Shown piece after piece: positions 25,826 through 47,365 of a stretch of 64,000 nucleotides of DNA. The notes below the pieces were generated by a model. It was given only the letters and a program-made list of their open reading frames with translations, was not told the origin of the DNA and did no database searches. Position numbers and translations under genes: made by a program. Location: positions 62,001 to 126,000 of IMG/VR virus record IMGVR_UViG_3300034073_003340; one strand, 5' to 3'. Positions within the stretch are counted from its first letter, which is position 1. The number at the start of each line of letters is the position of its first letter.

Positions 25826-26764
25826 TCAAAGTTTGAATGTATTCTTGAATTCAATCAGCTCACGCTTGCTCATACGGAAATGATCTAAAAATTCAGATTC
25901 AGTTTCAAACTGAGAGGTAATATGATCATAAGCTTCTTTGAAGCTTAGATCAAATTCGTTACTACGATGGATCAAAGCCTGCATCAGTTCGACTTCCATC
26001 CCACTGAGAGATTTAGAGTCACGAATATAATCTTCGTAAGCTTCACAAGCGGCAGGGAAAAGAGGCTTGATAAGAGCATAAATCGCGCGAGCAAATTCCT
26101 GAATCTCCCACTGGGCGTGCGAGTCTTCGCGTAGCTTGAGCATGTGGAACAGGTTGTGCAGATTTTGCTTCCAATAGAGTTCAGTATAACCTGCGACTGG
26201 CATTACAATACGTGCCAGCTCTCGAGCCACACCTTCCTCGGGAAATTCATCAGAAAATTCTCGGTAAGAGTCTTCAGCAGCTTCATTGAGAAGAGACTTA
26301 TACGCCGAATAAGAATGTAACGTTGCGCCCCGAATTACTTGCTGGGCCGTCAAAGCATCCAAATCACTGAGAGCTCCATCGCGGCCCTGCTTGTTCATCT
26401 TGCTCTGTGGAAGAATGTTGGCTACTTCTGGCACATACATTTCATCGGTGAGTACCGAATAGCGAGCCGAATACTCATTCAGGCTAGACGTGCGGTGACG
26501 GACCAGCTGACGCATCACAAAAATCGGTAGCTTGAGATGTAGTTTGACTTCACACATCTCAAGAGGGCTGGTGTGCTTGTGGCGAACCAAATAACGGATG
26601 AGTCCTCGGTCTTCACGAACACTCTTGGTGCCGTTACCATATGAGACTCTAGCCGCGCTGACAATAGCCGCATCATCTCCCATATGATCAACCAGACCTA
26701 CAAAGCCATGGTCTAATACGGGAAGATAGCGATCATTGCCCTGAACGTCGGATTGAAGGGTCAT
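25826..26764 (-). CDS. thyX: Flavin-dependent thymidylate synthase
   Basis: HTSPLE, RQLVRHRTSSLNEYSARY ThyX signature, HAQWEI. Confidence 0.97.
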   Translation of the reverse strand: MTLQSDVQGNDRYLPVLDHGFVGLVDHMGDDAAIVSAARVSYGNGTKSVREDRGLIRYLVRHKHTSPLEMCEVKLHLKLPIFVMRQLVRHRTSSLNEYSARYSVLTDEMYVPEVANILPQSKMNKQGRDGALSDLDALTAQQVIRGATLHSYSAYKSLLNEAAEDSYREFSDEFPEEGVARELARIVMPVAGYTELYWKQNLHNLFHMLKLREDSHAQWEIQEFARAIYALIKPLFPAACEAYEDYIRDSKSLSGMEVELMQALIHRSNEFDLSFKEAYDHITSQFETESEFLDHFRMSKRELIEFKNTFKL

Positions 26765-31169: not shown

Positions 31170-32438
31170 TCAATGATATTTAAAGTTTTTAATATTCAAA
31201 TTACTATCCTGGAATAGAATATCGGCAGATGTCAGTCTGCCTCCCTTTCCGCATCCAGTATCCATGAAATAAGCTTCGCCGCCTTTGGCTCCTTTGACTT
31301 TCAGAGGCTGAGTAGTGGATCTAATGTCATGTCCTACCATGACTCGCTTGTCGGCAGGTATCCTATTGACCCAATCATAAACCCTAGTTGGATATCCATC
31401 TGGTCTAGGTTCGGAAGTATTATCGACTTCGCCAAAGAGTGCCATGGTTTCAAATTTGCCAACAAGCCGAGGGGAATCTATATCAAACATCTCTGGTTCG
31501 GCTGCTCCATGAGTAAACAAGGTGTTACCAATAACCCAATGATGTCTTGAAAACCCTAAGAGGGCTTTATAGCGAATCTCAAACTTGCGCCGCGCGTCTG
31601 GTCCCAATTCCTCAATGGCTTTGGTAGTGACCTTGTTGCCATCACTCAACCTGACTTTGACGTCGTTATGCTTGATCTGTTCCAACCATCGTTCAATCTT
31701 CCTCTCATGGTTGCCAATCAAACAAAGTCCTCGCCCTCGAGATACCACATCATAGACATGATCCACGCATTCTATGGGATTAGGTCCATAGTCTATAATA
31801 TCACCCAGGAAGATACAAAATAGGTTTCTTTGTGTTGCCCATTCAGTTGCTGCCTTTAATGGTTCCAACATGGCGTGAACATCACCAATGACCATAAGGC
31901 CCCTAAAGCCTAGTTTTTCGATATTTTCTTTGAGTAACTTGTTTGATAGTCTGGGAACTACTTCAAAGTTTTCTTTCCGAGTGTCAATTACATTGGCAAC
32001 GCCATCACCTCTCAGAATATCTCTTTCATTGTTGCGGAAGATATGTTCCTGTTTGGTAATAGCCGCTATAGCGTTCGGCCTCCAGCTATTCTTTGAATCT
32101 ACAAGTTTGGAATCCAAACTTCGATTACATACAATATAGAAAATAGGAACTCCGATCTTCAAAGCAATGTCTGATAACCCAGTCCTGTCCTTTTTTCTCA
32201 AGTTAGTAGCATCAACCACTACTCGTTCACCAAGTTCTAGTTTGAGTTGAGCTCTTCGGTAAACTTCCCTAAAAACTATGTCATTTATATTGGTTTTCTG
32301 AACGTCGCCACACAGCTCATAACGGATAGCTTCACTACTCATGATTTCATAATCAGCAAACATTTTGGACAAGGTCGTCTTGCCACTGTTAGCTGGACCA
32401 ACGAAGATCACCAGACTATGGAGTGGTATTCTTTTCAT
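31170..32438 (-). CDS. Polynucleotide kinase-phosphatase (Pnkp-like: P-loop kinase + metallophosphoesterase)
   Basis: GPANSGKT and VVDATN kinase motifs; GDVH, GDIIDYG, GNHE, HG, GH phosphoesterase motifs; start ATG 32438. Confidence 0.88.
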   Translation of the reverse strand: MKRIPLHSLVIFVGPANSGKTTLSKMFADYEIMSSEAIRYELCGDVQKTNINDIVFREVYRRAQLKLELGERVVVDATNLRKKDRTGLSDIALKIGVPIFYIVCNRSLDSKLVDSKNSWRPNAIAAITKQEHIFRNNERDILRGDGVANVIDTRKENFEVVPRLSNKLLKENIEKLGFRGLMVIGDVHAMLEPLKAATEWATQRNLFCIFLGDIIDYGPNPIECVDHVYDVVSRGRGLCLIGNHERKIERWLEQIKHNDVKVRLSDGNKVTTKAIEELGPDARRKFEIRYKALLGFSRHHWVIGNTLFTHGAAEPEMFDIDSPRLVGKFETMALFGEVDNTSEPRPDGYPTRVYDWVNRIPADKRVMVGHDIRSTTQPLKVKGAKGGEAYFMDTGCGKGGRLTSADILFQDSNLNIKNFKYH

Positions 32439-32512
32439 ATCACCAATATAAATGAAAATTGACATCAAAGTCAATTTTGTTACATAATAGAGCATACAGG
32501 TGAGGATTCTAT

Positions 32513-33796: not shown

Positions 33797-34114
33797 TTAT
33801 TGTGCTCCTCCGAAAGTGAGTTTGAAAAGAACGGCGATATCAGGTTTTTCAAAATACCACCGTGAACCATTGCCATTGTGCCAAAAACTACTGCCTTTAT
33901 CCATACACCACGTCTTCATTTGGGAGATGGCAAAACCATCTGTTGGCTTGATATCAACGGTTGTCATCTCAGGCCAAGCTTCGCGGAGTCTTTTACTCCA
34001 ATGCTTGTCACGAGTGCTGATACCAACTGGCGGACAAAATAGAAGGCCCTGTTCTCGCCAGACCTTGATGTAGGCCTGAGTGGCCAGGCTTTGTGCTGTC
34101 TTGAAGTCCGTCAT
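33797..34114 (-). CDS. Hypothetical protein, FKL-motif family
   Basis: TGATG overlap with pth2; ends WYFEKPDIAVLFKLTF. Confidence 0.7.
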   Translation of the reverse strand: MTDFKTAQSLATQAYIKVWREQGLLFCPPVGISTRDKHWSKRLREAWPEMTTVDIKPTDGFAISQMKTWCMDKGSSFWHNGNGSRWYFEKPDIAVLFKLTFGGAQ

Positions 34115-34572
34115 CAGCCGACCACCGAGAATCGCTTGGTGATCGCATGAGCCTGCTCCTTGGTACAAGGACCAATACCAAGCGCAGTCACGATGGGATT
34201 ACCATCGAATGCCGTGCCGGGCATGATGTGGTTCTTGTCAATGATAAGCGAGGTGATCAGGCCAGCTTCCTGTGCGGCTTCATAAGCGCGCATAATTGCG
34301 GCTTCGTTCTTGGCCTTAAGGATGACCTGGGTGCCGATGAAGTCTGGGCCCTGGTAAACGCGCAGGAGCTCAGGATCGCGACGGCTCGCGAGAAGCACAC
34401 AGTTCTTGGCCGCATGACAAGCCTGACTTGCCATCTTGCCTGGAGTCATGTCCAGGTCGCCGCGAATGATGCTGTAGATGCGAAGCTTTTCGGAGGCTGC
34501 TTCGAATGCCTGGTAGTCGTTGTCGTTGTCGTAACGAGCAGCGGCTTCCTACAAGAAAGAATTCGTGATCAT
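34114..34572 (-). CDS. pth2: Peptidyl-tRNA hydrolase, Pth2 family, with in-frame UAG at codon 8 (34551-34549)
   Basis: KLRIYSIIRGDLDMTPGKMASQACHA and TALGIGP Pth2 motifs; the conserved first strand lies upstream of the track ATG 34449; every upstream in-frame ATG/GTG/TTG (SD-backed ATG 34572) precedes a TAG. Confidence 0.85.
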
Positions 34573-35094: not shown

Positions 35095-35454
35095 CTACTT
35101 ATACTGATCTAATACGTAAGAGTCAATAACTAATGACAATTTAGACATTATGGCGTCGTCAGCAGTCTGCGTTCTCACTATCAGACGCATTTGGTATTTT
35201 ACTGGCCCTGAAGTCTCTCTTATCTCCATATAGGTATAGAAATGACCCTTTGTATAATCAAGCAATTGCTTGAAAATCTTAGGATTCGGCCAATAATAAA
35301 ATGATGGGTGTTCGCAATCAAACCAGTCTTTTGCGAACCAATGCTGAAGAGAGATCTCCGTTGACCATCCCTCGGTTACTACTACCTCGGTGGATCTATT
35401 GAATTGAATATAGTCTGATCTAAGAGCCTTTGTGACTCTGCGGATGTCAGTCAA
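35095..35454 (-). CDS. Hypothetical protein, degenerate FKL-motif family; TAG stop
   Basis: DDAIMSKL near the C-terminus; overlaps the upstream gene. Confidence 0.6.
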   Translation of the reverse strand: MTDIRRVTKALRSDYIQFNRSTEVVVTEGWSTEISLQHWFAKDWFDCEHPSFYYWPNPKIFKQLLDYTKGHFYTYMEIRETSGPVKYQMRLIVRTQTADDAIMSKLSLVIDSYVLDQYK

Positions 35455-35890
35455 AATAGCCTCGGTCTGCGGCCAGGTTCAGCAGACCGCGATAGACTCG
35501 CATATTAGGTCTATACGGACCCCGTCCAAAATACTTTCTGTCGTCCCCATAGAGGGCCTTTTCAAGGGCCGCGGCAACCGCTGCGCTCCGACACTGCCCC
35601 ATGAGACAGTGAACGTAGATGACGCTTACATTGCGCTCTTTCATCGATTCAACGAAGTCTAAGATCTTTTCAGCATGACTGTCGTTGAAGAGAATACGAG
35701 TTTCCTCTTCCGGTTCGCCGTTCTTATATTCGTCGATATCATGGAACTGTAGGTTGAGTCTTGCGACCAAATGCCCATTCTCATGAACTTTTGGAAAATC
35801 ACCATTTTCACAGATACTGATTAGAGCCCACGACTTCTCAGGCGGACTCACTGCCATCATAGTGGCGCGGCTGTAAACGACAAATTTCAT
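35447..35890 (-). CDS. Protein-tyrosine/dual-specificity phosphatase-like protein
   Basis: VHCLMGQCRS CX5R motif; LISI..F.DI..PN pattern. Confidence 0.85.
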   Translation of the reverse strand: MKFVVYSRATMMAVSPPEKSWALISICENGDFPKVHENGHLVARLNLQFHDIDEYKNGEPEEETRILFNDSHAEKILDFVESMKERNVSVIYVHCLMGQCRSAAVAAALEKALYGDDRKYFGRGPYRPNMRVYRGLLNLAADRGYFD

Positions 35891-35920
35891 AACCAAACAT
35901 TACAGCACGCCGTCTAGTTG

Positions 35921-36739
35921 TCAATCAGCTTCTGGTGGTGTCTTGTTGATATCACCGCGCTGGGCCTGATACCAGTTGTAGACGCAGCGGTCGAGACCAA
36001 TCGCAATCTCGAGGACTAACGCGTCTTTTTCCACAATATCTTTCTTGCCCTGGAAGGTCAGCTTCTGAGGGAAATCAGTCCGAAGGCTGATCGAGCAGAC
36101 TTCCATCCACTTGTCGCCATTCCAAATTTCCACATCCATGGTTCGCTTGCTATAAGCGGGCAGTCGATCACTTTCCACCAGCCGGGTGGGTAGGTGTACC
36201 ATTGCGCCGATCATCTGCTGAACCTTGGGCAACATGGCTTCCTGATAATCCATACCAGAATCAGCAGTGAAGATACACTGGAACTCCTGCTGGTAGAACT
36301 CTTTTAGCCGCATATGCTTGGTGGGCTGGATAATTTCTCGACGAAAGCTTTTACCGGCTTGCCATACGACCAAGGGAGGGAAAACCTTGGGATGAACGTT
36401 ATTCAGTAGATGTTGCGCATAGGCATAGCTACCTGGCGTGGTCTCGGGACGAAGCGCGAGGATGCGTGGTGGAGGGCTAGCCTCACTATCGACCCACTTT
36501 TGATCTTCCTCACTCAATCGAGGATCTTGCTCCCAAATGTCGTTGGCAGTGTAATTGACGTTGAGGAGATCACGCGGGTTGAGCAGTGGAGCCTCGATCT
36601 GGAAAAACTTCCAGCGATCATTGAGGGCCTGAAGTTCTACCTGAATACGAGCGGCAAAGAAATCTCGCATAGTCTCACGAAGCTTGATCTCTTCCTCGTT
36701 CCAAAACACAAGGCCATTGATATTGAAGATGTTCTGCAT
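35921..36739 (-). CDS. Glycyl-tRNA synthetase (alpha2-type)-like catalytic core without anticodon-binding domain
   Basis: LRPETT, QAGKSFRRE..RLKEFYQQEFQ (motif 2), AYSKRTMDVE, EVCSISLRTDF, VLEIAIGLDR (motif 3); ends about 20 aa after motif 3. Confidence 0.85.
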   Translation of the reverse strand: MQNIFNINGLVFWNEEEIKLRETMRDFFAARIQVELQALNDRWKFFQIEAPLLNPRDLLNVNYTANDIWEQDPRLSEEDQKWVDSEASPPPRILALRPETTPGSYAYAQHLLNNVHPKVFPPLVVWQAGKSFRREIIQPTKHMRLKEFYQQEFQCIFTADSGMDYQEAMLPKVQQMIGAMVHLPTRLVESDRLPAYSKRTMDVEIWNGDKWMEVCSISLRTDFPQKLTFQGKKDIVEKDALVLEIAIGLDRCVYNWYQAQRGDINKTPPEAD

Positions 36740-36741
36740 TT

Positions 36742-37113
36742 TTAGTTCAACCTTATATGAGCCGGAAGAGGCAGGAACTCGTCGGTCTTGGGAAATCGAA
36801 TATGGGTGGCGACAGTGTCGCCATTCTCATGAATGATCACACGGAAAGTCAACTCCAACCCTGCATAGGCGAAGTTTCGAGCACAAGCGCCTTCGAGGCC
36901 TAACTCCTCTGCGTCAATTACTCGGTCGTCCTTGGTGCTGTAGACACGAAAGCCGTCCCAGGTCAGAGGAAAACAAGGCTTCTTGGCTCTCTCCTCACGG
37001 CGAGCACGCTCTACACGGATGTTAGCTTCCAAGCGGTCGAGGCATTGGTCATCCATCTTGTCAATGGGTATATCATCATAATTTGCGGTTCCCGTGTGAT
37101 CAATTATACCCAT
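36742..37113 (-). CDS. Hypothetical protein between tRNA-Sup and the GlyRS-like gene
   Basis: GAGGT SD; tightly packed. Confidence 0.65.
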   Translation of the reverse strand: MGIIDHTGTANYDDIPIDKMDDQCLDRLEANIRVERARREERAKKPCFPLTWDGFRVYSTKDDRVIDAEELGLEGACARNFAYAGLELTFRVIIHENGDTVATHIRFPKTDEFLPLPAHIRLN

Positions 37114-37131
37114 GATTTACCTCAAATTCGG

Positions 37132-37204
37132 CCTCCCCGCCGAGATTCGAACTCGGGTCTCGCGATTTTAGAGATCGCTGCTCTACCAACTGAGCTACGG
37201 GAAG
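37132..37204 (-). tRNA. Amber suppressor tRNA, anticodon CUA
   Basis: Canonical cloverleaf: acceptor CTTCCCG/CGGGGAG, D-arm GCTC-AGTTGGTA-GAGC, anticodon arm GCGAT-CT[CTA]AA-ATCGC (anticodon 37171-37169), T-arm CCGAG-TTCGAAT-CTCGG; G73; followed by CCG, not CCA. Confidence 0.93.
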
Positions 37205-37215
37205 ATGTAACCTGT

Positions 37216-37677
37216 TTAGGATTTATTCTCCAGCGCGTCAAGACGCTCCATGATCTCGCGGAGCAATCGAACTTGCTCGTCCGACTGTTTTTTGAGAATT
37301 TCTTGTTCTTCGTGCGTAAAGGCATTGCTGTCAACGATCAAATGTGCTGACATCTTTGCCGTGATAATCGGCACGACCAGAAACACGCAAATAAACATGA
37401 ACGCACCGCCAACCAACTTGGAGATCAAGTGGGTGGGATATAGATCACCATACCCCACCGTCGTAGCAGTGACAGTGGCCCACCAAAAGCTATTGGTGAG
37501 GTCTTTGCCCTCTACGATACTAAAGGTGACCGCAGCGATAGTCATTGTTATAATGAACAACATGACCATGGGAAGGACCTTGTTGGCCATCTTCTGCATG
37601 ATGTTCATTTGAACCATAGGTTGGGCAATAGCAATATCATAGATATCACTACCAACCTTTTCAATTCCCTTACGCAT
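37216..37677 (-). CDS. Potassium channel (2-TM, KcsA-like)
   Basis: [16 protein letters not shown] selectivity filter between two TM helices. Confidence 0.92.
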
Positions 37678-37700: not shown

Positions 37701-38294
37701 TCAGTCGAGTTCGCTATACTTGCTGGCCATGCGGTCCGACATGCGCTGAAGTCCACCGGCAATGGTCTGGTAGACCGAAGCAAACACTCGCTGGAGGAAG
37801 TCACCAACGAAAGTGCCGATGAACGAAAAGGGCCAAAACACCATCCAAGTGGTGATACGACCCTTGTTATAGCGGACCATTCGGTTTACATTGATGTCAA
37901 GTGCCTTGACATCATAGATGCTATTGAAAGCATCACGTACCGCAGCATCAGCTGGCATTTCCTTGAGACCCCGGCTTTCCAGAAAGCGCCAGCGAAGTGT
38001 TTCATAGCGATCGAAAAGCTTGGGCAGAAAGAATAGACGCCACTTGATGAATGCCCAAATGGCAGCAATGCCCACATATGCCAAGGCACCGTATACCACA
38101 TAGAGTGGATTATCCTGGATAAAATCCAGAACAGGTGCGTTGGTAAATGCCACAATAGCGGCAACCGTGATCAAAAGAGTGAGGGTGGCCGATCCGACCT
38201 TTTCCGAGTCGATCTGAGCCGCGAGGATCAGAGTAACAGTGCCGACGATAATCCAAAAGAGGACACCGCCGAACGTGATGAGTTCTGCAATCAT
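37701..38294 (-). CDS. Hypothetical membrane protein
   Basis: Three N-terminal TM segments; [11 protein letters not shown]; ATGA overlap with cysS. Confidence 0.7.
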
Positions 38295-39640
38295 GTTCGT
38301 CTCCATTCGGTGCCGTGAACGCCATCGGCCAGCGTGATCCCCATTTCACTTAACTGCTGACGGATCCTATCAGCTTCTTCATAATCTTTGGCTTTTCGTG
38401 CTTCTTGACGAGCAACCACTAGAGCATCAACCGCTTCCTTGTCAACACCTAGAGTTCTCCATTGATGTGGAGTATGGTTTAACAGTCCAAGAAGTTTGCC
38501 TGATTTGATCAACTTAGCCTTAAGTGGGGCCTTTTCCCTACTAGAATCAAGCTCGCTAGCCAAAGCGTGTAGAGCGGTAATAGCCGCAGGTGTATTGAGA
38601 TCCTGAAAAAGCTTAGAGGTGAATTCCCCGGTCAGGCTAGTATCTTCAGCCCAATTAATGTCGTCCCATCGATAAAGGATGTCATAAACCCCTGACAAGG
38701 ATTTATGAGCCTGCTCCAAAGCCTCCCATGAAAAGTCCATGGGTGAACGGTAATGGGTTCGGAGAAAATAGTATCGAACGGTCTCGGCCGGATACTTCTC
38801 GAATAGATCACTTAGAAGAATCACATTGCCGCGACTCTTGGACATCTTTTCACCGTTTACCGTCAAAAGCCCATTATGGACCCAATAACGAGAAAGTGGT
38901 TTGTCCATAGCACAATGACTTTGCGCGCATTCTGCTTCATGATGAGGGAAACGAAGATCAGCACCGCCCCCATGTATATCAATTGTCTGTTCCTGGAACT
39001 CTTTGGCAATCATCGCCGAGCATTCAATATGCCAGCCGGGTCTGCCGTCACCCCAAGGACTGCTCCACCGTGGCTCTCCAGACTTAGCAGGCTTCCAAAG
39101 GACAAAATCTCTGGGATCCTTTTTCTTTGGATCAACTACCACTCGACCACCGGATCTAAGATCATTATGATTGGCTAGACCTGGATGTGGATTACTGGGC
39201 ACGTGAAAAAAGACTTCACCCTTAGAAACATAGGCATGCTTGCTAATGATCAATCGCTTGATCAAAGTTCGCATTGCTTGAATGGATTCAGTGGCTTTGG
39301 GCTCGACCGTTGGTGGTAGACAATTCAATGCCTTGAGGTCGTTGTGATAGGAAGCAATAGCCGGATCAGTGATTTGACTGATGTCTACCGTCTGCTGCGA
39401 TGCTGCTTCAATGATTTTGTCATCAATGTCAGTTATGTTACGGGCATAGCGGACATGATCTTCGCCATAGATATATCGCAGAACTCGGAATAGCTGATCG
39501 AAAACCAGTGCGGGTCTCGCGTTACCAATATGAGCAGGACCATAGACCGTAGGTCCGCAAACATACATCATGACCTGCCTAGGGTCCCCAGGCGTAAAGG
39601 TCTCAGTCTGTCGAGATTGGCTGTTATAAATTTCCAACAT
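38291..39640 (-). CDS. cysS: Cysteinyl-tRNA synthetase
   Basis: MYVCGPTVY, HIGN, DFVLWK, GRPGWHIECSAM, DIHGGG.DL.FPHHE, KMSKS. Confidence 0.97.
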   Translation of the reverse strand: MLEIYNSQSRQTETFTPGDPRQVMMYVCGPTVYGPAHIGNARPALVFDQLFRVLRYIYGEDHVRYARNITDIDDKIIEAASQQTVDISQITDPAIASYHNDLKALNCLPPTVEPKATESIQAMRTLIKRLIISKHAYVSKGEVFFHVPSNPHPGLANHNDLRSGGRVVVDPKKKDPRDFVLWKPAKSGEPRWSSPWGDGRPGWHIECSAMIAKEFQEQTIDIHGGGADLRFPHHEAECAQSHCAMDKPLSRYWVHNGLLTVNGEKMSKSRGNVILLSDLFEKYPAETVRYYFLRTHYRSPMDFSWEALEQAHKSLSGVYDILYRWDDINWAEDTSLTGEFTSKLFQDLNTPAAITALHALASELDSSREKAPLKAKLIKSGKLLGLLNHTPHQWRTLGVDKEAVDALVVARQEARKAKDYEEADRIRQQLSEMGITLADGVHGTEWRRT

Positions 39641-39674: not shown

Positions 39675-40064
39675 TTAGAAGTTGCCTAAGAATGCTAGCT
39701 TAAACAAAGCAGCATGAGCTCTATTGCCAAACTTGGCAGTCAGTTGGGTAGTTCTTTTGTTGGTTAAAAAGTAGTTCAAGCCCAAGTCGACTTTGAATTC
39801 AAAGTATGCTTGATCCTGAGTTATACAATTGCGAGCCCATTCCATTACATTGGTTCCTTGGATTTCAAACGGAGCCCGCTCAAGAATTCCAGTGGAGTCA
39901 TCTGGATGCCACTCACTGGTGATATCAAAAGGAATAACAAATTTAACCTTATAAGGCATTACCAGATGCCAAGGATCTGATCTAAAGCTGTATTTGAATT
40001 TCTTGATGTTATCTAAGGGGTGATCACCGCCTCCATAGCGCGTTGATCTCTTATGCCAACTCAT
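39675..40064 (-). CDS. Hypothetical protein, FKL-motif family
   Basis: Ends KFGNRAHAALFKLAF. Confidence 0.65.
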   Translation of the reverse strand: MSWHKRSTRYGGGDHPLDNIKKFKYSFRSDPWHLVMPYKVKFVIPFDITSEWHPDDSTGILERAPFEIQGTNVMEWARNCITQDQAYFEFKVDLGLNYFLTNKRTTQLTAKFGNRAHAALFKLAFLGNF

Positions 40065-40894
40065 AGGTCCTCGCCAGCCCATTCCCTGGCAGCAGCTTTA
40101 CTGACACCATCGACAACTTTTTCCAAGTCGCAGGCATACAGTCCGGCGCAGCTGAATCCGTTGAGTTCAACAATCTTTGGACCATCTTCAGTTAGAGCAA
40201 CATCACAGGTATAAGCGATATCCACCTGCCATTCATGTTGCGCAACTTTTTGTGCCAACTCCCAACACTCCTGCGGCCAATCACGTCGCACGTCCAGTTT
40301 GCCATCCCAGCGATATTCTGATCCGGCAATAACCTGTTTGTCAGCGATAACAAAGCGGAATTCACCTTGGATATCCACACCGGGATTGATCAAAATCAGT
40401 GTGTCTTCCATTACCCCACTGATCTGTTCCAAGGTAGAGATATCGTCATCCAGCAATCCAAATTTGATTCGCTGGCCAGCAAATGTCTTGAACCCACTAT
40501 TAGGTCGGACAAAGAGCAGATTAGTATCGTGCTCATAAAATAGTTCACGAGCTCTCTGTTTGAACATGGACCATGTCATGAATTTGGCTTCTCGATTGAG
40601 AAACCAATTCAATGGCAAATAGCTCATATACTGAGTCGCAGAAGTCCGCAGATTTACCCCAAGCTGTCCAGGCTGGAATCTACCGTCTGGGTTTACTTTT
40701 TTGGTAAACTCGTGCGAACCGTAGAGAACTACTGGTCCATCAATGTTATCGATGTGGGAATAAGTCCCGTCGTCTTCTCGTTCAATCTCGATCACATTAT
40801 GACCAAGAGAACGAATAACATCAGGTAGAGGGCGCTGACCATAGATCATGCGCTCAATAATGAAATCGTCGAGGATCCAAGTGACTGGGGTCAT
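40061..40894 (-). CDS. ATP-grasp domain protein (DUF4343/R2K-like)
   Basis: FVRPNSGFKTFAG, EFRFVI, YTCDVA..KIVELNGFSCAGLY. Confidence 0.8.
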   Translation of the reverse strand: MTPVTWILDDFIIERMIYGQRPLPDVIRSLGHNVIEIEREDDGTYSHIDNIDGPVVLYGSHEFTKKVNPDGRFQPGQLGVNLRTSATQYMSYLPLNWFLNREAKFMTWSMFKQRARELFYEHDTNLLFVRPNSGFKTFAGQRIKFGLLDDDISTLEQISGVMEDTLILINPGVDIQGEFRFVIADKQVIAGSEYRWDGKLDVRRDWPQECWELAQKVAQHEWQVDIAYTCDVALTEDGPKIVELNGFSCAGLYACDLEKVVDGVSKAAAREWAGEDL

Positions 40895-41875: not shown

Positions 41876-43078
41876 TCACTCACACAGATTAGTATCCCTG
41901 AAATCACTCCAGGAAGTTCCACCCCACAGGTGACGCATTGAATTCACCTTGGTCTGGCTACCAAGCTGCGAACCCACATACTTGATCAACAGTGAATAGA
42001 CCCCTTCTTCGCCATCTGCCAATCGGTCCCAAGTCGAAAACTTAAAGCCCTGGAGCCCGTTCTTTTCGCTGGTAACCTTTTCAGCAAACTTCTTCTTGCT
42101 ACCGTTGAAGTTGTCGAAATCCGCCTGGACTTCCCAGTAGAGTTCGCTTGCTAGCTTCTTCAGTCCTACGAAAATGCTCTTGGCAAAATCGTCAGCAGCC
42201 TGAACTAGGTCCTCGGGCAGAAAAGGCTTGGCGTCATCCAGCTTTTCGTCCACGATCAGACGAATAACATCCTTTTCATGGTTGAGATGTTCCAGCGTCT
42301 TATGGAGCAGCGAATACCATTCTCCCTTCAGCTTGAGCATGGTGCCGTCTGCCCAACGGAAAACATCACCTTCCTCGCCCTCAACTCCTCGGATCTCGGC
42401 AATGGTTTCGTCGTCAATGCCAGTGATCTCGCCGGAAAAAGAACAACAAGGAATGCCATAGGAGGCGGCTTCCTCCTTGAGCAAAGGAGCATCCATATAC
42501 TCACCGGTTTCGTTGTCGCGAATAGCAGTCAAAACCAGCTGAGTCACGGGATAATCGATAACAATGCGCTGAATGCGAGAGCACCATTCAAAGATCGGAG
42601 TCTTGCCCTGGCTCATCCAATACTTACAGAACTCGTGATACTCAACACGATCCTTGGCCCACACGTCCACCGGCGCAGCCACGCCAGTAAGACCCATCTT
42701 GGTGCAGAAGCGCACTTCGCCCTTGATCAGCAGAGGAGTGATCATCGAACCATCAAGCTTCTTGAATCGACGATACGGCTTTGACCAATCGACTGATCCC
42801 GGCATAGTCTCAGGACGTTCTCCGAGGTTGAAGAACTTGTGATACTTGCGAGAAATCACCTTGCCAGTCGCAGTATCAAAGGTGATGCCGCGACATTCGC
42901 GCAACAGTGCCGTCCGTCGATCAGTTACTGGCGGGAAGGTATCTTCGAAATTGACGAGATAGTTGATCACGGTGTATCCGTGCTCTTCGTCCACCTTGAC
43001 CACAAATTCTTCGCGGCCCTCAATGGCTTCAAGAATTTCCGACAAATGCGTAATCTTGGGAAATTGATAGGAAGTCAT
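41876..43078 (-). CDS. RNA ligase, T4 Rnl1-like
   Basis: RECRGITF, KFFNLGE, KLDGSMI (motif I), FEW, EG.V, KLKGEWY. Confidence 0.92.
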   Translation of the reverse strand: MTSYQFPKITHLSEILEAIEGREEFVVKVDEEHGYTVINYLVNFEDTFPPVTDRRTALLRECRGITFDTATGKVISRKYHKFFNLGERPETMPGSVDWSKPYRRFKKLDGSMITPLLIKGEVRFCTKMGLTGVAAPVDVWAKDRVEYHEFCKYWMSQGKTPIFEWCSRIQRIVIDYPVTQLVLTAIRDNETGEYMDAPLLKEEAASYGIPCCSFSGEITGIDDETIAEIRGVEGEEGDVFRWADGTMLKLKGEWYSLLHKTLEHLNHEKDVIRLIVDEKLDDAKPFLPEDLVQAADDFAKSIFVGLKKLASELYWEVQADFDNFNGSKKKFAEKVTSEKNGLQGFKFSTWDRLADGEEGVYSLLIKYVGSQLGSQTKVNSMRHLWGGTSWSDFRDTNLCE

Positions 43079-43203
43079 TGATTTCACCTTTGCGTTTGGT
43101 TTTAAACTATTGCTGACAAGAAATTTCCTGCTCAGCGTCAATGTTGGATAATGACACTGAACAGGAAATTGTCAACCAGACTTTGGTGTCTAGACACCAA
43201 AAA

Positions 43204-43824
43204 TTATGGGCGGTGTTCAATCACCTTGTCACCCAAGCCCATAGCAACTGCCTCTTCTGCTGAAAGAAACGTGTCAAATTTCATGGTCTGGAAGAGCTCT
43301 TCATATGTCTTACCAGCGGTGTTGTGGCGAACATACAGTTGAGTCAGACGCTCGTTGATTCGAAGAGATTCTTCGAATGACCGCTTGGCATCTTCAAACT
43401 GCAGATCCTGAACATGAACCGACCCACTGGTTCCACGGGTGCCGCTTGACACACGGTGGATCATAGTGCGGGATTCAGGCAGAAGATAACGCTTACCGGC
43501 AGCGCCGGCCTGGGCCAAGAACGAACCCATGGAACATGCCTGTCCCATGACCAGCGTATTCACGTCTGGCTTGATAAACCGCATGGTGTCATAGATAGCT
43601 AGACCAGCAGTAACGGCACCACCGGGTGAATTGATGTAGAGCCAAATATCCTTGGCGGGATCTTCACTTTCGAGAAAAAGCAGCTGGGCACAGACAATCT
43701 GCGCCATCTGATCTTCAACTTCGCCATTGAGAAAAACGATGCGTTCTTTGAGAAGGCGCGAATAGATATCGTAGGCGCGCTCTCCGCGACCGGTTGTTTC
43801 AATAACAGTTGGAACCAATGGCAT
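43204..43824 (-). CDS. clpP: ATP-dependent Clp protease proteolytic subunit
   Basis: [32 protein letters not shown]. Confidence 0.96.
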
Positions 43825-43888
43825 TATAAAAACTCCTTGCGTTAGAACACCGTGTTAAAACCATAAACCATTGATAGCAATATTCAAA

Positions 43889-44200
43889 TTACTTTGTTTC
43901 CCACGCCTGATGACCACCGCGAAGCTTAAACATGAGTGCGTCATTTTTATCTTCGAATCTCACAACCATGATATGGCCGTCAGCTTTTCCCTTGGGATTT
44001 TTATAGGTGTAATAGGCCCATTTACCAGGCGTATTTTCCATTAGCCAATTCTCAACTTCTTTGGCGGCTTCAAAAGTATCCGGAAGTTGGAACTGAGTCC
44101 GAGTCCAAGACTTCTTCATAGGACCAGATAACGACCTGCGAAATAGCTTGTCGGTCTGAACTTCAAAATCAGTAAAAGTGAGGTTTGTTGGCTTTTCCAT
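43889..44200 (-). CDS. Hypothetical protein, FKL-motif family
   Basis: VRFEDKNDALMFKLRGG. Confidence 0.7.
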   Translation of the reverse strand: MEKPTNLTFTDFEVQTDKLFRRSLSGPMKKSWTRTQFQLPDTFEAAKEVENWLMENTPGKWAYYTYKNPKGKADGHIMVVRFEDKNDALMFKLRGGHQAWETK

Positions 44201-44247
44201 ACCACCTATTATGTAGGAAAACTAACCCGGTCGTCTATATTCTAGTC

Positions 44248-44273
44248 AAAAAAGAGCCCCATAGCATGGGGCT
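44248..44273 (-). terminator. Intrinsic terminator
   Basis: AGCCCC-ATGCTAT-GGGGCT followed by a T-tract on the minus strand. Confidence 0.7.
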
Positions 44274-44296
44274 AGTTGACAGCAAGGCTAGTAGGG

Positions 44297-44452
44297 CTAG
44301 GGACGTATTCCAGCCCCTGCGAGCAGCTTTTGAGGGTCTAGTGTGGGGTCTTGCGTAACAAGCATTGTTACGACATGATGAATCATGTCGCCATTTGCTT
44401 GGTCATAATTTTTGAGTATACGAAGAACTTTGATGAGGGTAGGTTTGTGCAT
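44297..44452 (-). CDS. Small hypothetical protein (51 aa), TAG stop
   Basis: Manual translation MHKPTLIKVLRILKNYDQANGDMIHHVVTMLVTQDPTLDPQKLLAGAGIRP; GGAG SD; below the track cutoff. Confidence 0.55.
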   Translation of the reverse strand: MHKPTLIKVLRILKNYDQANGDMIHHVVTMLVTQDPTLDPQKLLAGAGIRP

Positions 44453-44517
44453 TAGCACTCCGATCTATGTGGGAGAGTCCTGGACTCTCCCACACAAAGC
44501 AACTCTCTACAGAATTC

Positions 44518-45807
44518 TTACGCCGCGCGGCGCTCGTTTTCCTTCACATAATACGCGGTCATGCCCCAGGGAGCCACGATGCTCGTGTTGCCATGGACAA
44601 TGAACAGCGTATCGCAATAGTCCTCTTCGCCCCACGTGCCGCACGGATAACCATCTGTGAACATCACGAACTTCTTGGGTTCAATGCTGTCACCGATGCC
44701 ATCGATGTCACCGAAGCCATAGCCGGCCGGATCGCGCATGAACTCCCAGTTACACTCGAACATGGTGCCACCGCCGCCCTTGGGCTCGTAGTCCATAATC
44801 TCGTCAATGTTGTTCTGTGTGAACACCTTGGGATTATAGACCTGGGTGTCGAACGTCCAAAGCGTCAGCTTGAAGTCATCGAACGTTTCCATAATGCCCT
44901 TGGTTTCCGAGAGGAAATCGCGCAGCATCTGATCGGTCATCGACCCCGAGGTATCAATACAGACCGCAACGTCGACCGTGTCCTTGAAGTTGCTGCCGGG
45001 AAGGATAACGGACGCGCCGCCACCAATACCCCACGACCGCTTGCTGGGACGGTTGAACGTATAGTCATCCTTGATAGAAGACTGAATGTGCATCTCGAGA
45101 AGAGTCCGCCAGTCCATAATGGGGTTGGTGAATTCTTCAATGAGGCGACGCACCCCTGCGGGGACCTTGCCAGCACCAACGGCCTGGGCAGCATTGATAA
45201 CAGCGGCCTTGATCTCATTACGGATCTTTTGCTTGTCCTCTTCGGTCAACTGGGGAGGACCGTCGGGACCGCCCTGGACCGTGACCGTAATGGTCTTGCC
45301 ACTGCCGTTGCCGTCGCCATCGCCGTCACCGTCGCTGCCGTCCATTTCCAAATGCTCGTCCAGAGTCATCTGAATCTTGGTCTGGTTCTGTTCCAGCAGT
45401 CGGTAAACTTCCTCAGAAGTCATTTCGTCTGTATACTTGTCATCATACAGACCGCCCTTGGGCATGTTACCCAGCTTTTCCTTGACCAGGGAATAGTTGA
45501 CGATGTAGTCATTCGCCATATTCCACAGCTTGTGTTCGCGCGAACCCTTGCGGCCAAGGTGATCATAAACACAGTGGAGGACCTCATGACCAATGAGGAA
45601 CAGCAGTTCATCAGGGGTCAGAGACTTGATAAATTCGCGATTGTAATACAGCTTGCGACCATCGGTTGCTGCCGTCTTACACCACTTGGTAGCGTCAACG
45701 AGCTCCATGCGGGTTGCGAGATTGCCGAAAAACGGCTGGTTGAAGAGGAGCCCTACTCGGGCCTGAACGATCGACTGAACGACCGGATCGGACATATTTG
45801 CTGCCAT
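44518..45807 (-). CDS. Metallopeptidase-like + vWA domain protein (DUF2201-type)
   Basis: TAATDG, HEVLH, DTSGSM MIDAS, GGGGT, FTDG. Confidence 0.9.
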   Translation of the reverse strand: MAANMSDPVVQSIVQARVGLLFNQPFFGNLATRMELVDATKWCKTAATDGRKLYYNREFIKSLTPDELLFLIGHEVLHCVYDHLGRKGSREHKLWNMANDYIVNYSLVKEKLGNMPKGGLYDDKYTDEMTSEEVYRLLEQNQTKIQMTLDEHLEMDGSDGDGDGDGNGSGKTITVTVQGGPDGPPQLTEEDKQKIRNEIKAAVINAAQAVGAGKVPAGVRRLIEEFTNPIMDWRTLLEMHIQSSIKDDYTFNRPSKRSWGIGGGASVILPGSNFKDTVDVAVCIDTSGSMTDQMLRDFLSETKGIMETFDDFKLTLWTFDTQVYNPKVFTQNNIDEIMDYEPKGGGGTMFECNWEFMRDPAGYGFGDIDGIGDSIEPKKFVMFTDGYPCGTWGEEDYCDTLFIVHGNTSIVAPWGMTAYYVKENERRAA

Positions 45808-45964
45808 GAGATCCTTCCTTTTGTTGTATCCGCTAGTATAGCGGAAAACATCGTCGTGTCAACTTTTTAGGTGACAAGGTCAGTTGTGATTTTGTGATAA
45901 AATGAAAGGGTGACCTGTTGCCAAGCCACCCTTTCCCCGTTAGGCCACGGGAAGCCGTTACGGA

Positions 45965-47182
45965 TCAAGCCGCCAGGATCAGGTCCTGATACTTGTCCGA
46001 GAACTCATCCCAGTTCTTCATGCCCGACGGATCGAACTGGATCCGGAAGATCGCCAGCGCGGTCCGCGAACCCATGATGACCATTTCCGACTGGAAGTTC
46101 TTCATCATGAAGCCCAGGAAGTTGTCCACGTTGGCCGAGAACTTCTTCTTGTCCTCGGGCTTGGCGCCCTTGGCCGTCGAAGAATCATACCGGTCCTTGA
46201 GTTCGTAGCACAGAGCCGTGGTCAGAGCATACATCAGCGAGATGTCAGCGCCCTTCTTCAGTTCAGTGATCTTGCCCTCGAGAATGTCGCCGGCTGCGGG
46301 CAGGTTTGCCGCATTCTTGCGGTATTCCAGGAACTTGACCGCGATACCGTCACCGACCGAGCCGGCGATCAGGCTCATCTGAACCGTTTCAGGAATGTTG
46401 GGATCACCGCGCAGAATGTCGGAGACCATTTCCCAGGAACGCGGGGTGGGGAAGCCGCGCGACGCGCTGGTAGCTTCGAACTGGAACAGTTCGTGCTTGA
46501 AAGCGGTCAGGTAGCCGACCACCGCCTGGTGGAAACCGGTCTGCAGAGCAAAGGTCTGGAAATCCTCGAAGTCCACGCGCATTTCAATGTGCGTGAAGCG
46601 ATTCTGGAGCGGAGTGGGCATCTTGAACGTCGCGCCCTTGTCAGTCTCGCGGTTACCGGCCGCCATCACGATCACGTTATCGGGGACCACGTATTCGCCG
46701 AGGGCGCCATCGAGAACCAGCTGGTAGGAGCCGGCCTGGACCGAAGGAGCAGCGTTGGGCAGTTCGTCCAGCAGGATGATAGCACCATCGTACTTGTGAC
46801 CCATATCATCGGTGATCTGAGCCTTGCGCATGGGCGTTCCATCATCGGCAACGCCGCGCTTCGGCAGCATCTGCGGAATCGCCCATTCAACATAGGCGCG
46901 GCCGGTCATATCGTCCTTGAACGGAACCGGGATACCACGAAGGTCGGTGGGTTCCATCTGAGTCAGTCGGATATCGATGAGCTTGAAGTTCAGTTCGTCA
47001 GCGACCTGCTCGACGACCGAAGACTTGGCAATGCCAGGCGCGCCCCAGATAAACAGACCACGACGCTTCTTGCCGCGTTCTGCGTTCTCGAGGTTGACCT
47101 TGACCATATGCTTGATAGCAATCGCAGCCTCCGACGGCTTGACCGTCAGTGTGTCGATGCGCGTTGAACCCTTCTTGGACAT
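45965..47182 (-). CDS. MoxR-like AAA+ ATPase
   Basis: GAPGIAKS Walker A, ILLDE Walker B, AAGNR, NRF, TPRSW; ATG 47182 with AGGAG SD. Confidence 0.9.
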   Translation of the reverse strand: MSKKGSTRIDTLTVKPSEAAIAIKHMVKVNLENAERGKKRRGLFIWGAPGIAKSSVVEQVADELNFKLIDIRLTQMEPTDLRGIPVPFKDDMTGRAYVEWAIPQMLPKRGVADDGTPMRKAQITDDMGHKYDGAIILLDELPNAAPSVQAGSYQLVLDGALGEYVVPDNVIVMAAGNRETDKGATFKMPTPLQNRFTHIEMRVDFEDFQTFALQTGFHQAVVGYLTAFKHELFQFEATSASRGFPTPRSWEMVSDILRGDPNIPETVQMSLIAGSVGDGIAVKFLEYRKNAANLPAAGDILEGKITELKKGADISLMYALTTALCYELKDRYDSSTAKGAKPEDKKKFSANVDNFLGFMMKNFQSEMVIMGSRTALAIFRIQFDPSGMKNWDEFSDKYQDLILAA

Positions 47183-47365
47183 TGTAACTCCTTTTGTTTG
47201 GCCTAACGGTTTGCTGTAAACCTTCACCATTACTAGCGTCAACGAAAGAGGTGTCAACCAACTTTTTTCCACTAGGTGAAGATTTTTGCCCCCGCCGTGT
47301 TTCAGCTGTTAACTGACAGGTAAGAGTTACGCAATAAAGATTTTGCGTCAGAGGTGAATTTTTCT

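What the first reader, a model, noticed from the sequence alone, without database searches (positions are those of the whole stretch)
35921..36739. Stand-alone GlyRS catalytic core lacking the anticodon-binding domain
Seen: LRPET, GKSFRRE, EFYQQE and LEIAIGLDR keep the acidic residues corresponding to the glycine pocket of alpha2-type GlyRS. The ORF stops about 20 aa after motif 3 and the insertion domains are missing. Inference: it recognises tRNA by the acceptor stem only, or it transfers an amino acid to a non-tRNA acceptor as other aaRS paralogs (EpmA, amino acid:carrier-protein ligases) do.
Basis: partly seen in the sequence, partly recalled or inferred. Interest (0 to 1): 0.75.

Follow-up and report, generated by a model that had tools for sequence, protein, structure and literature searches.

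The report
Stand-alone mini glycyl-tRNA synthetase core
A 436-kb jumbo phage encodes a 272-residue protein that is only the catalytic core of a glycyl-tRNA synthetase, and it belongs to a large, uncharacterised, always-short family of jumbo phages and some alphaproteobacteria that may be a minimal, anticodon-blind tRNA-charging enzyme.

Summary
Window 35921-36739 (minus strand) is an intact 272-aa ORF carrying class II motifs 1-3. It also carries the three-glutamate glycine pocket of alpha2-type GlyRS (E99, E152, E244). It has no anticodon-binding domain and no insertion domains. The predicted structure is very confident (pLDDT 94.9), and its best matches are bacterial alpha2 GlyRS catalytic domains.

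It is not a recent truncation. More than 1,800 clusters (90% identity) of 210-350 aa relatives exist. They occur in jumbo phages, including Sinorhizobium, Caulobacter, Brevundimonas and Xanthomonas phages. One bacterial clade (Rhizobium, Devosia, Phenylobacterium and others) is named only 'aminoacyl--tRNA ligase-related protein'.

In phages the gene often lies in tRNA arrays, with tRNA-Gly modestly enriched nearby. Here it lies in a tRNA-repair and translation island. No carrier protein or other conserved partner gene was found.

Best explanation (about 0.5): it activates glycine and charges tRNA(Gly) through the acceptor end alone.

An amber-suppressor tRNA(CUA) lies 390 nt upstream. That linkage is the synteny of one phage lineage. 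Enzyme and tRNA each occur without the other, so a dedicated suppressor pair is unlikely (about 0.1). A non-tRNA acceptor remains open (about 0.25). Biochemistry is needed to decide.

The parts
35921..36739 (-). Gene for the 272-aa stand-alone GlyRS-like class IIa catalytic core (mini-GlyRS-like protein)
   Evidence: ORF. Pfam PF00587. PDB profile hit to GlyRS at 5e-21. AF2 model pLDDT 94.9. Foldseek best hits are alpha2 GlyRS.
36572..36610 (-). Motif 1 region, KFFQIEAPLLNPR (residues 44-56)
   Evidence: Coordinates. E49 is nearly invariant in the family. Strands 44-47 and 53-55 in the model.
36431..36457 (-). ALRPETTPG (residues 95-103). E99 is the first glutamate of the glycine pocket (human Glu-245).
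   Evidence: Alignments to GlyRS. Pocket residues named in PMC4938167. T101 is invariant; R97, E99 and T100 are kept in at least 90% of sequences.
36272..36373 (-). Motif 2 with its loop, LVVWQAGKSFRREIIQPTKHMRLKEFYQQEFQCI (residues 123-156). Includes R133, E135, F148, and E152, the second pocket glutamate (human Glu-296).
36068..36094 (-). SISLRTDFP (residues 216-224). R220 and D222 are invariant and align with the GlyRS 'NRTDF' segment.
   Evidence: Correspondence of R220 to human Arg-410 is inferred from that alignment and from PMC4938167.
35978..36022 (-). Motif 3, ALVLEIAIGLDRCVY (residues 240-254). E244 is the third pocket glutamate (human Glu-522). R251 is the motif-3 arginine.
   Evidence: Mycobacterial GlyRS has VIEPAAGLTR here, so A246 is compatible with glycine.
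37130..37204 (-). tRNA with anticodon CUA (amber suppressor). It has a C1:G72 pair and G73, and A76 is not encoded. It lies 390 nt upstream of the gene on the same strand. Neighbour of uncertain relation.
   Evidence: ARAGORN. Rfam RF00005, 63.1 bits. Conserved position in 9 syntenic loci, later 13. Compensatory changes in the acceptor stem.
36742..37113 (-). 123-aa ORF between the tRNA and the gene. Its stop lies 2 nt before the gene's ATG. It has no known family and is not conserved outside close relatives.

Best explanation
The ORF encodes a free-standing class IIa aminoacyl-tRNA-synthetase catalytic domain descended from the dimeric (alpha2) glycyl-tRNA synthetase lineage. It belongs to a large, always-short family carried by jumbo phages and by one clade of alphaproteobacterial chromosomes.

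Most likely mechanism:
- It binds ATP and glycine and makes glycyl-adenylate in a pocket built like that of alpha2 GlyRS.
- It then transfers glycine to the 3' end of a tRNA that it recognises only at the acceptor end, because it has no domain that could reach the anticodon.
- The most likely substrate is tRNA(Gly), phage-encoded or host. The phage's four tRNA(Gly) genes carry the bacterial set G1-C72, C2-G71, U73.

In the phage this would supply anticodon-independent glycylation as part of a tRNA-repair and translation-maintenance toolkit.

Shown here: the architecture, the conserved ATP and glycine residues, the confident GlyRS-like fold, the family's age and spread, and the tRNA-rich context in phages. 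Inferred: glycine activation, the tRNA acceptor, and tRNA(Gly) as the substrate.
For: **1. Active site kept under strong constraint.**
- Among 54 sequences 28-78% identical to the window protein, the invariant positions are T101, P122, Q127, R133, E135, F148, Q150, E152, Y196, D202, E213, R220, D222, E244, D250 and R251. Nearly invariant (at least 90%) include R97, E99 and A246.
- E99, E152 and E244 align to the three glutamates that bind glycine in alpha2 GlyRS (PMC4938167).

**2. GlyRS is the nearest kin by sequence and by fold.**
- The family profile hits GlyRS at 5e-21. SerRS and ProRS follow at about 2e-7.
- Foldseek best hits are GlyRS from M. tuberculosis, N. equitans and T. thermophilus.
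- All 30 best Swiss-Prot models are bacterial GlyRS.

**3. Not a truncation.** There are 1,844 hits, and all 120 shown are 237-325 aa. There are 155 clusters at 50% identity with E below 1e-10. None of the best 150 representatives exceeds 352 aa.

**4. tRNA context in phages.**
- Of 56 dereplicated phage loci outside this window's clade, 17 have a tRNA within 1 kb of the gene. In the window's own genome 55 of 59 tRNA genes lie in one array of about 34 kb out of 436 kb, roughly 8%.
- tRNA-Gly is the commonest neighbour. It makes up 7 of 24 tRNAs within 300 nt, against 21 of 153 in the loci overall (Fisher p = 0.025). In the window's genome it is 4 of 59 tRNAs.
- Examples: L311 has tRNA-Gly 102 and 195 nt upstream. 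L035 has tRNA-Gly 77 and 167 nt downstream.

**5. The window's neighbourhood is a tRNA and translation island**:
- PNK/phosphatase-like gene
- PTH2
- this gene
- tRNA-CUA
- full-length CysRS
- T4-type RNA ligase

In another clade the gene is followed immediately by CysRS.

**6. No sign of a non-tRNA partner.**
- No PP-binding carrier protein in the genome.
- No conserved partner gene across phage loci or across bacterial genera.
Against: - No activity was measured.
- C35 and C36 are part of glycine identity in the bacterial, yeast and archaeal GlyRS systems studied (PMC9976931). Loss of the anticodon-binding domain should therefore cost efficiency and specificity.
- Most known free-standing class II cores do not charge tRNA. 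Examples from my own knowledge are HisZ, AsnA, EpmA and the amino acid:carrier-protein ligases.
- The roughly 40 metagenomic loci whose gene is closest to the bacterial clade, and the 80 bacterial genome loci, show no tRNA context (3 incidental tRNAs in 80 loci).
- From my own knowledge, not tested here, those bacteria have a canonical GlyQS. A redundant GlyRS there would be unexplained.
- The tRNA-Gly enrichment is modest. It rests on about five partly related loci.
- The complex prediction with tRNA was not run by the tool and gives no evidence either way.
Confidence: 0.5

Rival explanations
1. Dedicated suppressor pair. The anticodon-blind enzyme charges the adjacent amber-suppressor tRNA(CUA, G73), with glycine or another amino acid. 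This would give the phage its own way to read UAG.
For: - The tRNA(CUA) lies upstream on the same strand in the window, in phage Phosso and in 7 IMG/VR relatives, plus 4 further distinct metagenome loci (L292, L294, L295, L303). Distances are 53-1,950 nt.
- It lies apart from the main tRNA array, which holds 55 of the 59 tRNAs.
- G73 and the anticodon loop are invariant, while the acceptor stem changes by compensatory substitutions.
- An enzyme without an anticodon-binding domain could accept a CUA anticodon.
- There is precedent for phage aaRS:suppressor-tRNA 'code-change' operons, namely TrpRS:tRNA-UCA (PMC12636597).
- One family member sits in a TGA-recoded phage, where both in-frame TGA codons fall on glycine columns.
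Against: - All tRNA(CUA)-adjacent IMG/VR and Phosso loci examined share one extended syntenic block: CysRS, membrane protein, (K+ channel), tRNA, (ORF), gene, phosphatase, PTH2. The linkage is therefore the gene order of one lineage, not repeated association.
- Double dissociation. Caulobacter phage CcrSC and Brevundimonas phage Domovoi have the enzyme, and the tRNA search found no tRNA(CUA) in them. The 80 bacterial loci show no tRNA(CUA) within 4 kb of the gene; the bacterial genomes were not searched as wholes. Conversely, the complete or nearly complete phage genomes G027, G032 and G033 have G73-type tRNA(CUA) of the same build but no enzyme.
- The genome is not recoded. Coding density is 0.86 under the standard code. 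TAG ends 56 of 566 ORFs. There is no excess of in-frame TAG.
- The first base pair flips between G:C and C:G among the adjacent tRNAs, while the enzyme's motif-2 loop (QPTKHMRLKEF) is unchanged in the window, in Phosso and in the close relatives aligned.
- The tRNA body resembles tRNA-Lys(CUU), not tRNA-Gly.
- G73 is not a tRNA(Gly) discriminator in any domain of life.
Confidence: 0.1
2. Non-tRNA chemistry. The core activates glycine or ATP and passes glycine to a protein, lipid, cell-wall precursor or small molecule. Alternatively it makes a dinucleotide polyphosphate such as Ap4A. Other aaRS paralogs do things of this kind.
For: - The architecture matches the general pattern of free-standing class II cores with non-canonical roles (my own knowledge).
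- The chromosomal copies in Rhizobium, Devosia, Phenylobacterium and others have no tRNA neighbours. From my own knowledge, not tested here, these bacteria keep a canonical GlyRS.
- In the two Rhizobium arrangements the neighbours are cell-wall enzymes: a DD-carboxypeptidase in one, and a lytic transglycosylase plus DUF459 in the other.
- Human GlyRS is known for glycine-independent Ap4A synthesis (my own knowledge; PDB entries 2zt5-2zt8 appear).
Against: - No carrier protein in the phage genome.
- No partner gene conserved across phage clades or bacterial genera.
- Similarity to amino acid:carrier-protein ligases is insignificant, E 0.14-0.36.
- The cell-wall neighbours are confined to Rhizobium.
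- Phage copies are enriched in tRNA arrays and tRNA-repair islands.
Confidence: 0.25
3. Decayed remnant or purely regulatory, non-catalytic paralog (HisZ-like or pol-gamma-B-like).
For: It is short and far below the GlyRS equivalog cut-offs.
Against: - All ATP-binding and glycine-binding residues are invariant or nearly invariant across 54 sequences 28-78% identical to the window protein.
- The frame is intact in nearly all loci.
- The fold prediction is very confident.
- Non-catalytic paralogs usually lose these residues (my own knowledge).
Confidence: 0.03

Closest known systems
Dimeric (alpha2-type) glycyl-tRNA synthetase, e.g. M. tuberculosis (8t5n), T. thermophilus (1ati) and human (2pme)
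   Same: - Class IIa catalytic fold and motifs 1-3.
- The RPET, FxQxE and xEx(A/S)xGxxR glutamates of the glycine pocket.
- The RTDF arginine.
- Best match by sequence profile and by fold.
   Different: - No C-terminal anticodon-binding domain.
- About 55-70 residues of insertions are missing.
- Only 16-23% identity.
- Scores far below the GlyRS family cut-offs.
- Distinct, more basic motif-2 loop (QPTKHMRLKEF).
Amino acid:[carrier protein] ligases (Bll0957 family, 3mey/4h2w)
   Same: Free-standing class II core without a tRNA-binding domain. Some activate glycine (my own knowledge).
   Different: - They are SerRS-derived. Similarity here is insignificant, E 0.14-0.36.
- No carrier-protein gene nearby or anywhere in the genome.
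N-terminal-domain-less pyrrolysyl-tRNA synthetases (PylSc and deltaPylSn class, about 270-290 aa)
   Same: A class II enzyme of similar size that charges an amber-suppressor tRNA(CUA) without reading the anticodon (my own knowledge). Weak profile hits at about 1e-4.
   Different: PheRS-like subclass IIc, with a large hydrophobic pocket. Here the pocket is the small acidic GlyRS type, and GlyRS scores 17 orders of magnitude better.
Phage 'code-change' operons pairing an aaRS with a suppressor tRNA (TrpRS:tRNA-UCA; PMC12636597)
   Same: An aaRS-like gene lies next to a suppressor tRNA in a large phage.
   Different: - This genome is not recoded.
- Enzyme and tRNA each occur without the other.
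- The enzyme here is a truncated core, not a full synthetase.
Other aaRS paralogs without tRNA-charging roles (HisZ, AsnA, EpmA/PoxA)
   Same: Stand-alone class II catalytic cores.
   Different: They derive from HisRS, AspRS and LysRS respectively. None appears among the matches. This protein keeps a complete GlyRS-type active site.

Membership tests
Canonical alpha2-type glycyl-tRNA synthetase | Class II catalytic fold with motifs 1, 2 and 3 | tested here: met
   Pfam PF00587 above cut-off. AF2 model pLDDT 94.9. Foldseek best hits are GlyRS. R133 and R251 invariant.
Canonical alpha2-type glycyl-tRNA synthetase | Three conserved glutamates forming the acidic glycine pocket (human Glu-245, Glu-296, Glu-522) | tested here: met
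   E99, E152 and E244 align to them. The residues are defined in PMC4938167. They are invariant or nearly so in the family.
Canonical alpha2-type glycyl-tRNA synthetase | C-terminal HGTP-type anticodon-binding domain that reads C35 and C36 | tested here: not met
   The protein ends 21 aa after motif 3. No PF03129 hit in the ORF. The only PF03129 hit in the genome is in the ThrRS-like gene.
Canonical alpha2-type glycyl-tRNA synthetase | Score above the curated GlyRS equivalog cut-offs | tested here: not met
   NF003211: 55.5 bits against 312. TIGR00389: 31.9 bits against 243.
Canonical alpha2-type glycyl-tRNA synthetase | Glycylation of tRNA(Gly) | not testable with these tools
   Only context is available: tRNA arrays and modest tRNA-Gly enrichment. 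The complex prediction was not run.
Amino acid:[carrier protein] ligase | Significant similarity to the SerRS-like aa:CP ligase family | tested here: not met
   E 0.36 against PDB 3mey/4h2w. E 0.14 against NF005479.
Amino acid:[carrier protein] ligase | Carrier-protein (PP-binding) gene adjacent or in the genome | tested here: not met
   PF00550 has no match in the 436-kb genome. No conserved neighbour.
Phage aaRS:suppressor-tRNA code-change module | aaRS gene next to a suppressor tRNA | tested here: met
   tRNA(CUA) lies 390 nt upstream on the same strand. The position is conserved in the syntenic clade.
Phage aaRS:suppressor-tRNA code-change module | Genome uses the stop codon as a sense codon | tested here: not met
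   Coding density 0.86 under the standard code, little gain with TAG read as sense, and no excess of in-frame TAG.
Phage aaRS:suppressor-tRNA code-change module | Enzyme and tRNA co-occur across genomes | tested here: not met
   Enzyme without a detected tRNA(CUA): CcrSC and Domovoi, whole genomes searched. The 80 bacterial loci show none within 4 kb of the gene. G73-type tRNA(CUA) without the enzyme: G027, G032, G033.
Mini-GlyRS-like family ('aminoacyl--tRNA ligase-related protein' of RefSeq) | About 210-350 aa, full-length homology, shared invariant motifs | tested here: met
   58-90% identity to phage relatives and 52-57% to Rhizobium and Devosia proteins. Names. Trees.

The most novel reading that the evidence does not exclude
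The enzyme is an anticodon-blind glycine-charging enzyme that phages use to load tRNAs with non-glycine anticodons. Here that would be the adjacent amber suppressor tRNA(CUA), and in the TGA-recoded relative L040 a tRNA reading UGA. This would be a natural, compact (about 250 aa) orthogonal synthetase-tRNA pair for reading stop codons as glycine.
Probability: 0.1. Interest if true: 0.85.

Novelty: new variant of a known kind. Interest (0 to 1): 0.6.

Why it matters
**If it charges tRNA.** It would be among the smallest natural aminoacyl-tRNA synthetases: about 250 residues, catalytic core only. It would also be a natural experiment on how much of a class II synthetase is needed for tRNA selection. 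That bears on models of early synthetase evolution and on the design of compact orthogonal pairs.

**In phage biology.** It would add an enzyme to the tRNA-repair and translation-maintenance toolkit of jumbo phages: large tRNA arrays, RNA ligase, PNK-like kinase/phosphatase, PTH2 and synthetases. This toolkit is thought to counter host attacks on tRNA.

**If it has a non-tRNA acceptor.** It would define a new GlyRS-derived paralog family, shared by phages and by Rhizobium and Caulobacter relatives.

**Either way.** The family is large (over 1,800 clusters at 90% identity). It is present in culturable phages (Phosso, CcrSC, XbC2, Brevundimonas phages) and in genetically tractable bacteria (Rhizobium leguminosarum). 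It is annotated inconsistently as glycyl-, 'serine-', generic or hypothetical. It is therefore directly testable.

Tried and rejected
1. **Recent truncation or pseudogene.** Rejected by the length distribution of homologs.

2. **Global TAG recoding of the phage.** Rejected by coding density, stop-codon usage and the in-frame stop census.

3. **Dedicated enzyme:tRNA(CUA) pair.** Examined in depth.
 - The adjacency is the synteny of one lineage.
 - A pattern scan found 97 tRNA(CUA) stretches of the same build in IMG/VR. Only those of the known clade have the enzyme nearby. My first discriminator-calling script was faulty, so I read the discriminators by eye.
 - Genome-level double dissociation.

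4. **Carrier-protein acceptor.** No PP-binding domain in the genome. No free tRNA_bind (Trbp111-like) domain that could act in trans.

5. **Conserved partner gene.** All-against-all clustering of flanking ORFs found none in phages. The 33-locus cluster is the antisense ORF of the gene itself. None was found across bacterial genera.

6. **Complex prediction with phage tRNA(Gly).** The tool did not fold it. This is no evidence either way.

7. **PHROGs.** No family.

8. **Literature.** Full-text searches for a phage mini-GlyRS or a truncated phage aaRS found nothing on this family.

9. I removed that row and did not resend it.

10. **Tree artefact.** In the tree my script picked wrong-frame ORFs for two Rhizobium rows (L223, L243). 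Those two rows should be ignored.
Full report
**What is there.**
- Window 35921-36739 (minus strand) is an intact 272-aa ORF with an ATG start and a TGA stop.
- It matches the class II core shared by Gly, His, Pro, Ser and Thr synthetases (PF00587, E 4e-9).
- Among curated NCBI models it matches GlyRS best, but far below the cut-off: 55.5 bits against 312.
- The chain ends 21 residues after the motif-3 arginine.

**Genome.**
- The window is bases 62001-126000 of a 435,856-bp phage genome with direct terminal repeats.
- The genome carries 59 tRNA genes, 55 of them in one array at 292-326 kb.

**Relation to GlyRS.**
- A profile of 54 family members hits solved alpha2-type GlyRS at 5e-21 (M. tuberculosis), followed by N. 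equitans, T. thermophilus and human. The next synthetase kinds (SerRS, ProRS) are at about 2e-7.
- The residue-level alignments place E99 and E152 on human Glu-245 and Glu-296, and E244 on the 'IEP(A/S)' glutamate, Glu-522.
- PMC4938167 names exactly these three absolutely conserved glutamates as the glycine-amino-group binders of this GlyRS type. It says Ser-524 is not conserved.
- The equivalent residue here is A246, as in mycobacterial GlyRS.
- An AlphaFold model built on the family alignment is very confident: pLDDT 94.9, pTM 0.92.
- Foldseek ranks GlyRS structures first, then ProRS. All 30 best Swiss-Prot models are bacterial GlyRS. They align to residues 8-258 of this protein over their residues about 30-340.
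- The anticodon-binding domain and about 55-70 residues of insertions are therefore truly absent.
- The only HGTP anticodon domain in the whole genome belongs to a ThrRS-like gene. There is no free tRNA_bind domain.

**Not a truncation but a family.**
- The word-index search found 1,844 relatives. All of the best 120 are 237-325 aa, and many lie on contigs of 200-960 kb.
- The exhaustive search of 1.84 billion representatives found 155 clusters (50% identity) below 1e-10. None of the best 150 representatives exceeds 352 aa.
- Sixteen positions are invariant across 54 sequences 28-78% identical to the window protein. They include the motif 2 and motif 3 arginines, the adenine-stacking phenylalanine and two of the pocket glutamates, E152 and E244. 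E99 is kept in at least 90%.
- Cultured phages carry the gene under inconsistent names:
  - Sinorhizobium phage Phosso: 'serine-tRNA synthetase', 58% identical
  - Xanthomonas phage XbC2: 'RNA synthetase class II'
  - Brevundimonas phages: 'aminoacyl-tRNA synthetase'
  - Caulobacter phages CcrSC, CcrBL9, C1, C2, J4, BL47 and RB23: 'hypothetical'
- PHROGs has no family for it.

**It is not phage-only.**
- A scan of species-representative genomes found 118 relatives. Many are in Rhizobium chromosomes, and others in Shinella, Devosia, Labrys, Pseudaminobacter and Phenylobacterium.
- RefSeq calls them 'aminoacyl--tRNA ligase-related protein' and JGI calls them 'glycyl-tRNA synthetase'.
- In a tree, the true chromosomal copies form one clade nested among phage lineages. 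Two rows there, L223 and L243, are wrong-frame artefacts of my script.
- Their neighbours differ between genera. The cell-wall enzymes beside the gene are confined to the two Rhizobium arrangements.

**Context in phages.**
- Around the gene the window encodes the following:
  - a PNK/phosphatase-like protein (31170-32495)
  - PTH2 (34114-34449)
  - a DSP-like phosphatase
  - the mini-GlyRS-like gene
  - a 123-aa ORF
  - tRNA(CUA)
  - a K+ channel
  - a membrane protein
  - a full-length CysRS (38291-39640)
  - an R2K ATP-grasp protein
  - a T4-type RNA ligase (41876-43141)
- This is a tRNA-repair and translation island.
- Outside this clade, 17 of 56 dereplicated phage loci have a tRNA within 1 kb of the gene.
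- tRNA-Gly is the commonest neighbour. It is 7 of 24 tRNAs within 300 nt, against 21 of 153 overall (Fisher p = 0.025). In this phage's full set it is 4 of 59.
- That signal is modest and rests on about five partly related loci.
- In another clade the gene is followed immediately by CysRS.
- No protein partner is conserved. The genome has no PP-binding carrier protein.

**The suppressor tRNA.**
- A well-formed tRNA with anticodon CUA lies 390 nt upstream on the same strand (Rfam 63.1 bits).
- The same arrangement occurs in Phosso, in seven IMG/VR relatives and in further metagenome loci.
- G73 and the anticodon loop are invariant, and the acceptor stem shows compensatory changes.
- This suggested a dedicated pair, with an anticodon-blind enzyme loading a suppressor. 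The tests do not favour it:
  - All adjacent IMG/VR and Phosso loci examined share one long syntenic block, so the linkage is the gene order of one lineage.
  - The genome is not recoded.
  - The first base pair flips between G:C and C:G, while the enzyme's motif-2 loop is unchanged in the window, Phosso and the close relatives aligned.
  - The tRNA body resembles tRNA-Lys(CUU).
  - The enzyme occurs without a detected tRNA(CUA) in CcrSC and Domovoi, and the bacterial loci have none nearby.
  - Complete or nearly complete phage genomes with G73-type tRNA(CUA) of the same build lack the enzyme (G027, G032, G033).
- Two anecdotes keep a small probability alive:
  - One family member lies in a TGA-recoded phage, and both of its in-frame TGA codons fall on glycine columns.
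  - In another contig the only tRNA found is a tRNA-Gly-like gene with an aberrant anticodon loop.

**Verdict.**
- The most likely function is glycine activation followed by anticodon-independent glycylation of tRNA(Gly) through the acceptor end (confidence about 0.5).
- The phage's tRNA(Gly) genes carry the bacterial acceptor identity set G1-C72, C2-G71 and U73.
- A non-tRNA acceptor or product is the main rival (about 0.25).
- The dedicated suppressor pair is the most novel reading not excluded (about 0.1).
- No paper in the searched library describes the family.
- The attempt to model a tRNA complex was not executed by the tool and counts for nothing.

Noticed in passing
window 37130-37204 (-): Amber-suppressor tRNA (anticodon CUA, C1:G72, G73, A76 not encoded), isolated from the main tRNA array. 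A second tRNA(CUA), with A73, lies in the array at genome position 293258-293333. Several relatives carry both a G73 type and an A73 type, sometimes in tandem.
   Followed up: yes
window 37216-37677 (-): 153-aa viral-type potassium channel with the TVGYGD selectivity filter (Pfam Ion_trans_2, 1.8e-11), between CysRS and the tRNA. Conserved in several relatives.
   Followed up: partly
window 31170-32495 (-) and 41876-43141 (-): A kinase (AAA_33) plus metallophosphatase fusion and a T4 Rnl1-type RNA ligase. Together they look like a tRNA-repair pair of the T4 Pnkp/Rnl1 kind, flanking the synthetase island.
   Followed up: partly
window 34114-34449 (-) and 38291-39640 (-): A PTH2-type (archaeal/eukaryotic-type) peptidyl-tRNA hydrolase and a full-length CysRS (TIGR00435, 460 bits). 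Both are conserved in the syntenic block. In another phage clade (L015-L020) CysRS follows the mini gene directly.
   Followed up: partly
own genome, L049:1426-1878 (-) and L048:1189-2385 (-): Two more reduced class II synthetase-like genes. One is a 150-aa HisRS-like core fragment inside the tRNA array (PF13393, 6e-15). The other is a 398-aa ThrRS-like protein with core and anticodon domain but no N-terminal editing part.
   Followed up: partly
L040:4001-4660 (+): The family member in this 39-kb complete phage contig has two in-frame TGA codons, at the invariant G9 column and at a consensus-glycine column. Long ORFs appear only if TGA is read as sense. This suggests a phage using TGA as glycine (code 25-like).
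   Followed up: partly
L372:1501-1575 (+): In the contig that holds family member L038, the only tRNA found has a tRNA-Gly acceptor end (GCGGGTA...TACCCGC-U73-CCA) but an aberrant anticodon arm. ARAGORN reads a 4-base 'tccg' anticodon.
   Followed up: no
L213-L291 (bacterial genomes): Chromosomal homologs in many Rhizobium species and in Shinella, Devosia, Labrys, Pseudaminobacter and Phenylobacterium. In the two Rhizobium arrangements the neighbours are cell-wall enzymes: a DD-carboxypeptidase in one, and an SLT_2 lytic transglycosylase plus DUF459 in the other.
   Followed up: partly
window 35447-35896 (-): 149-aa dual-specificity-phosphatase-like protein (phrog_5614) directly downstream of the gene. 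Conserved in the syntenic block and annotated 'tyrosine phosphatase' in Phosso.
   Followed up: no
window 43204-47272 (-), 40061-40894 (-), 25826-26764 (-): ClpP protease, a DUF2201 metallopeptidase/VWA protein with a MoxR-like AAA ATPase, an R2K-clade ATP-grasp protein, and ThyX.
   Followed up: no
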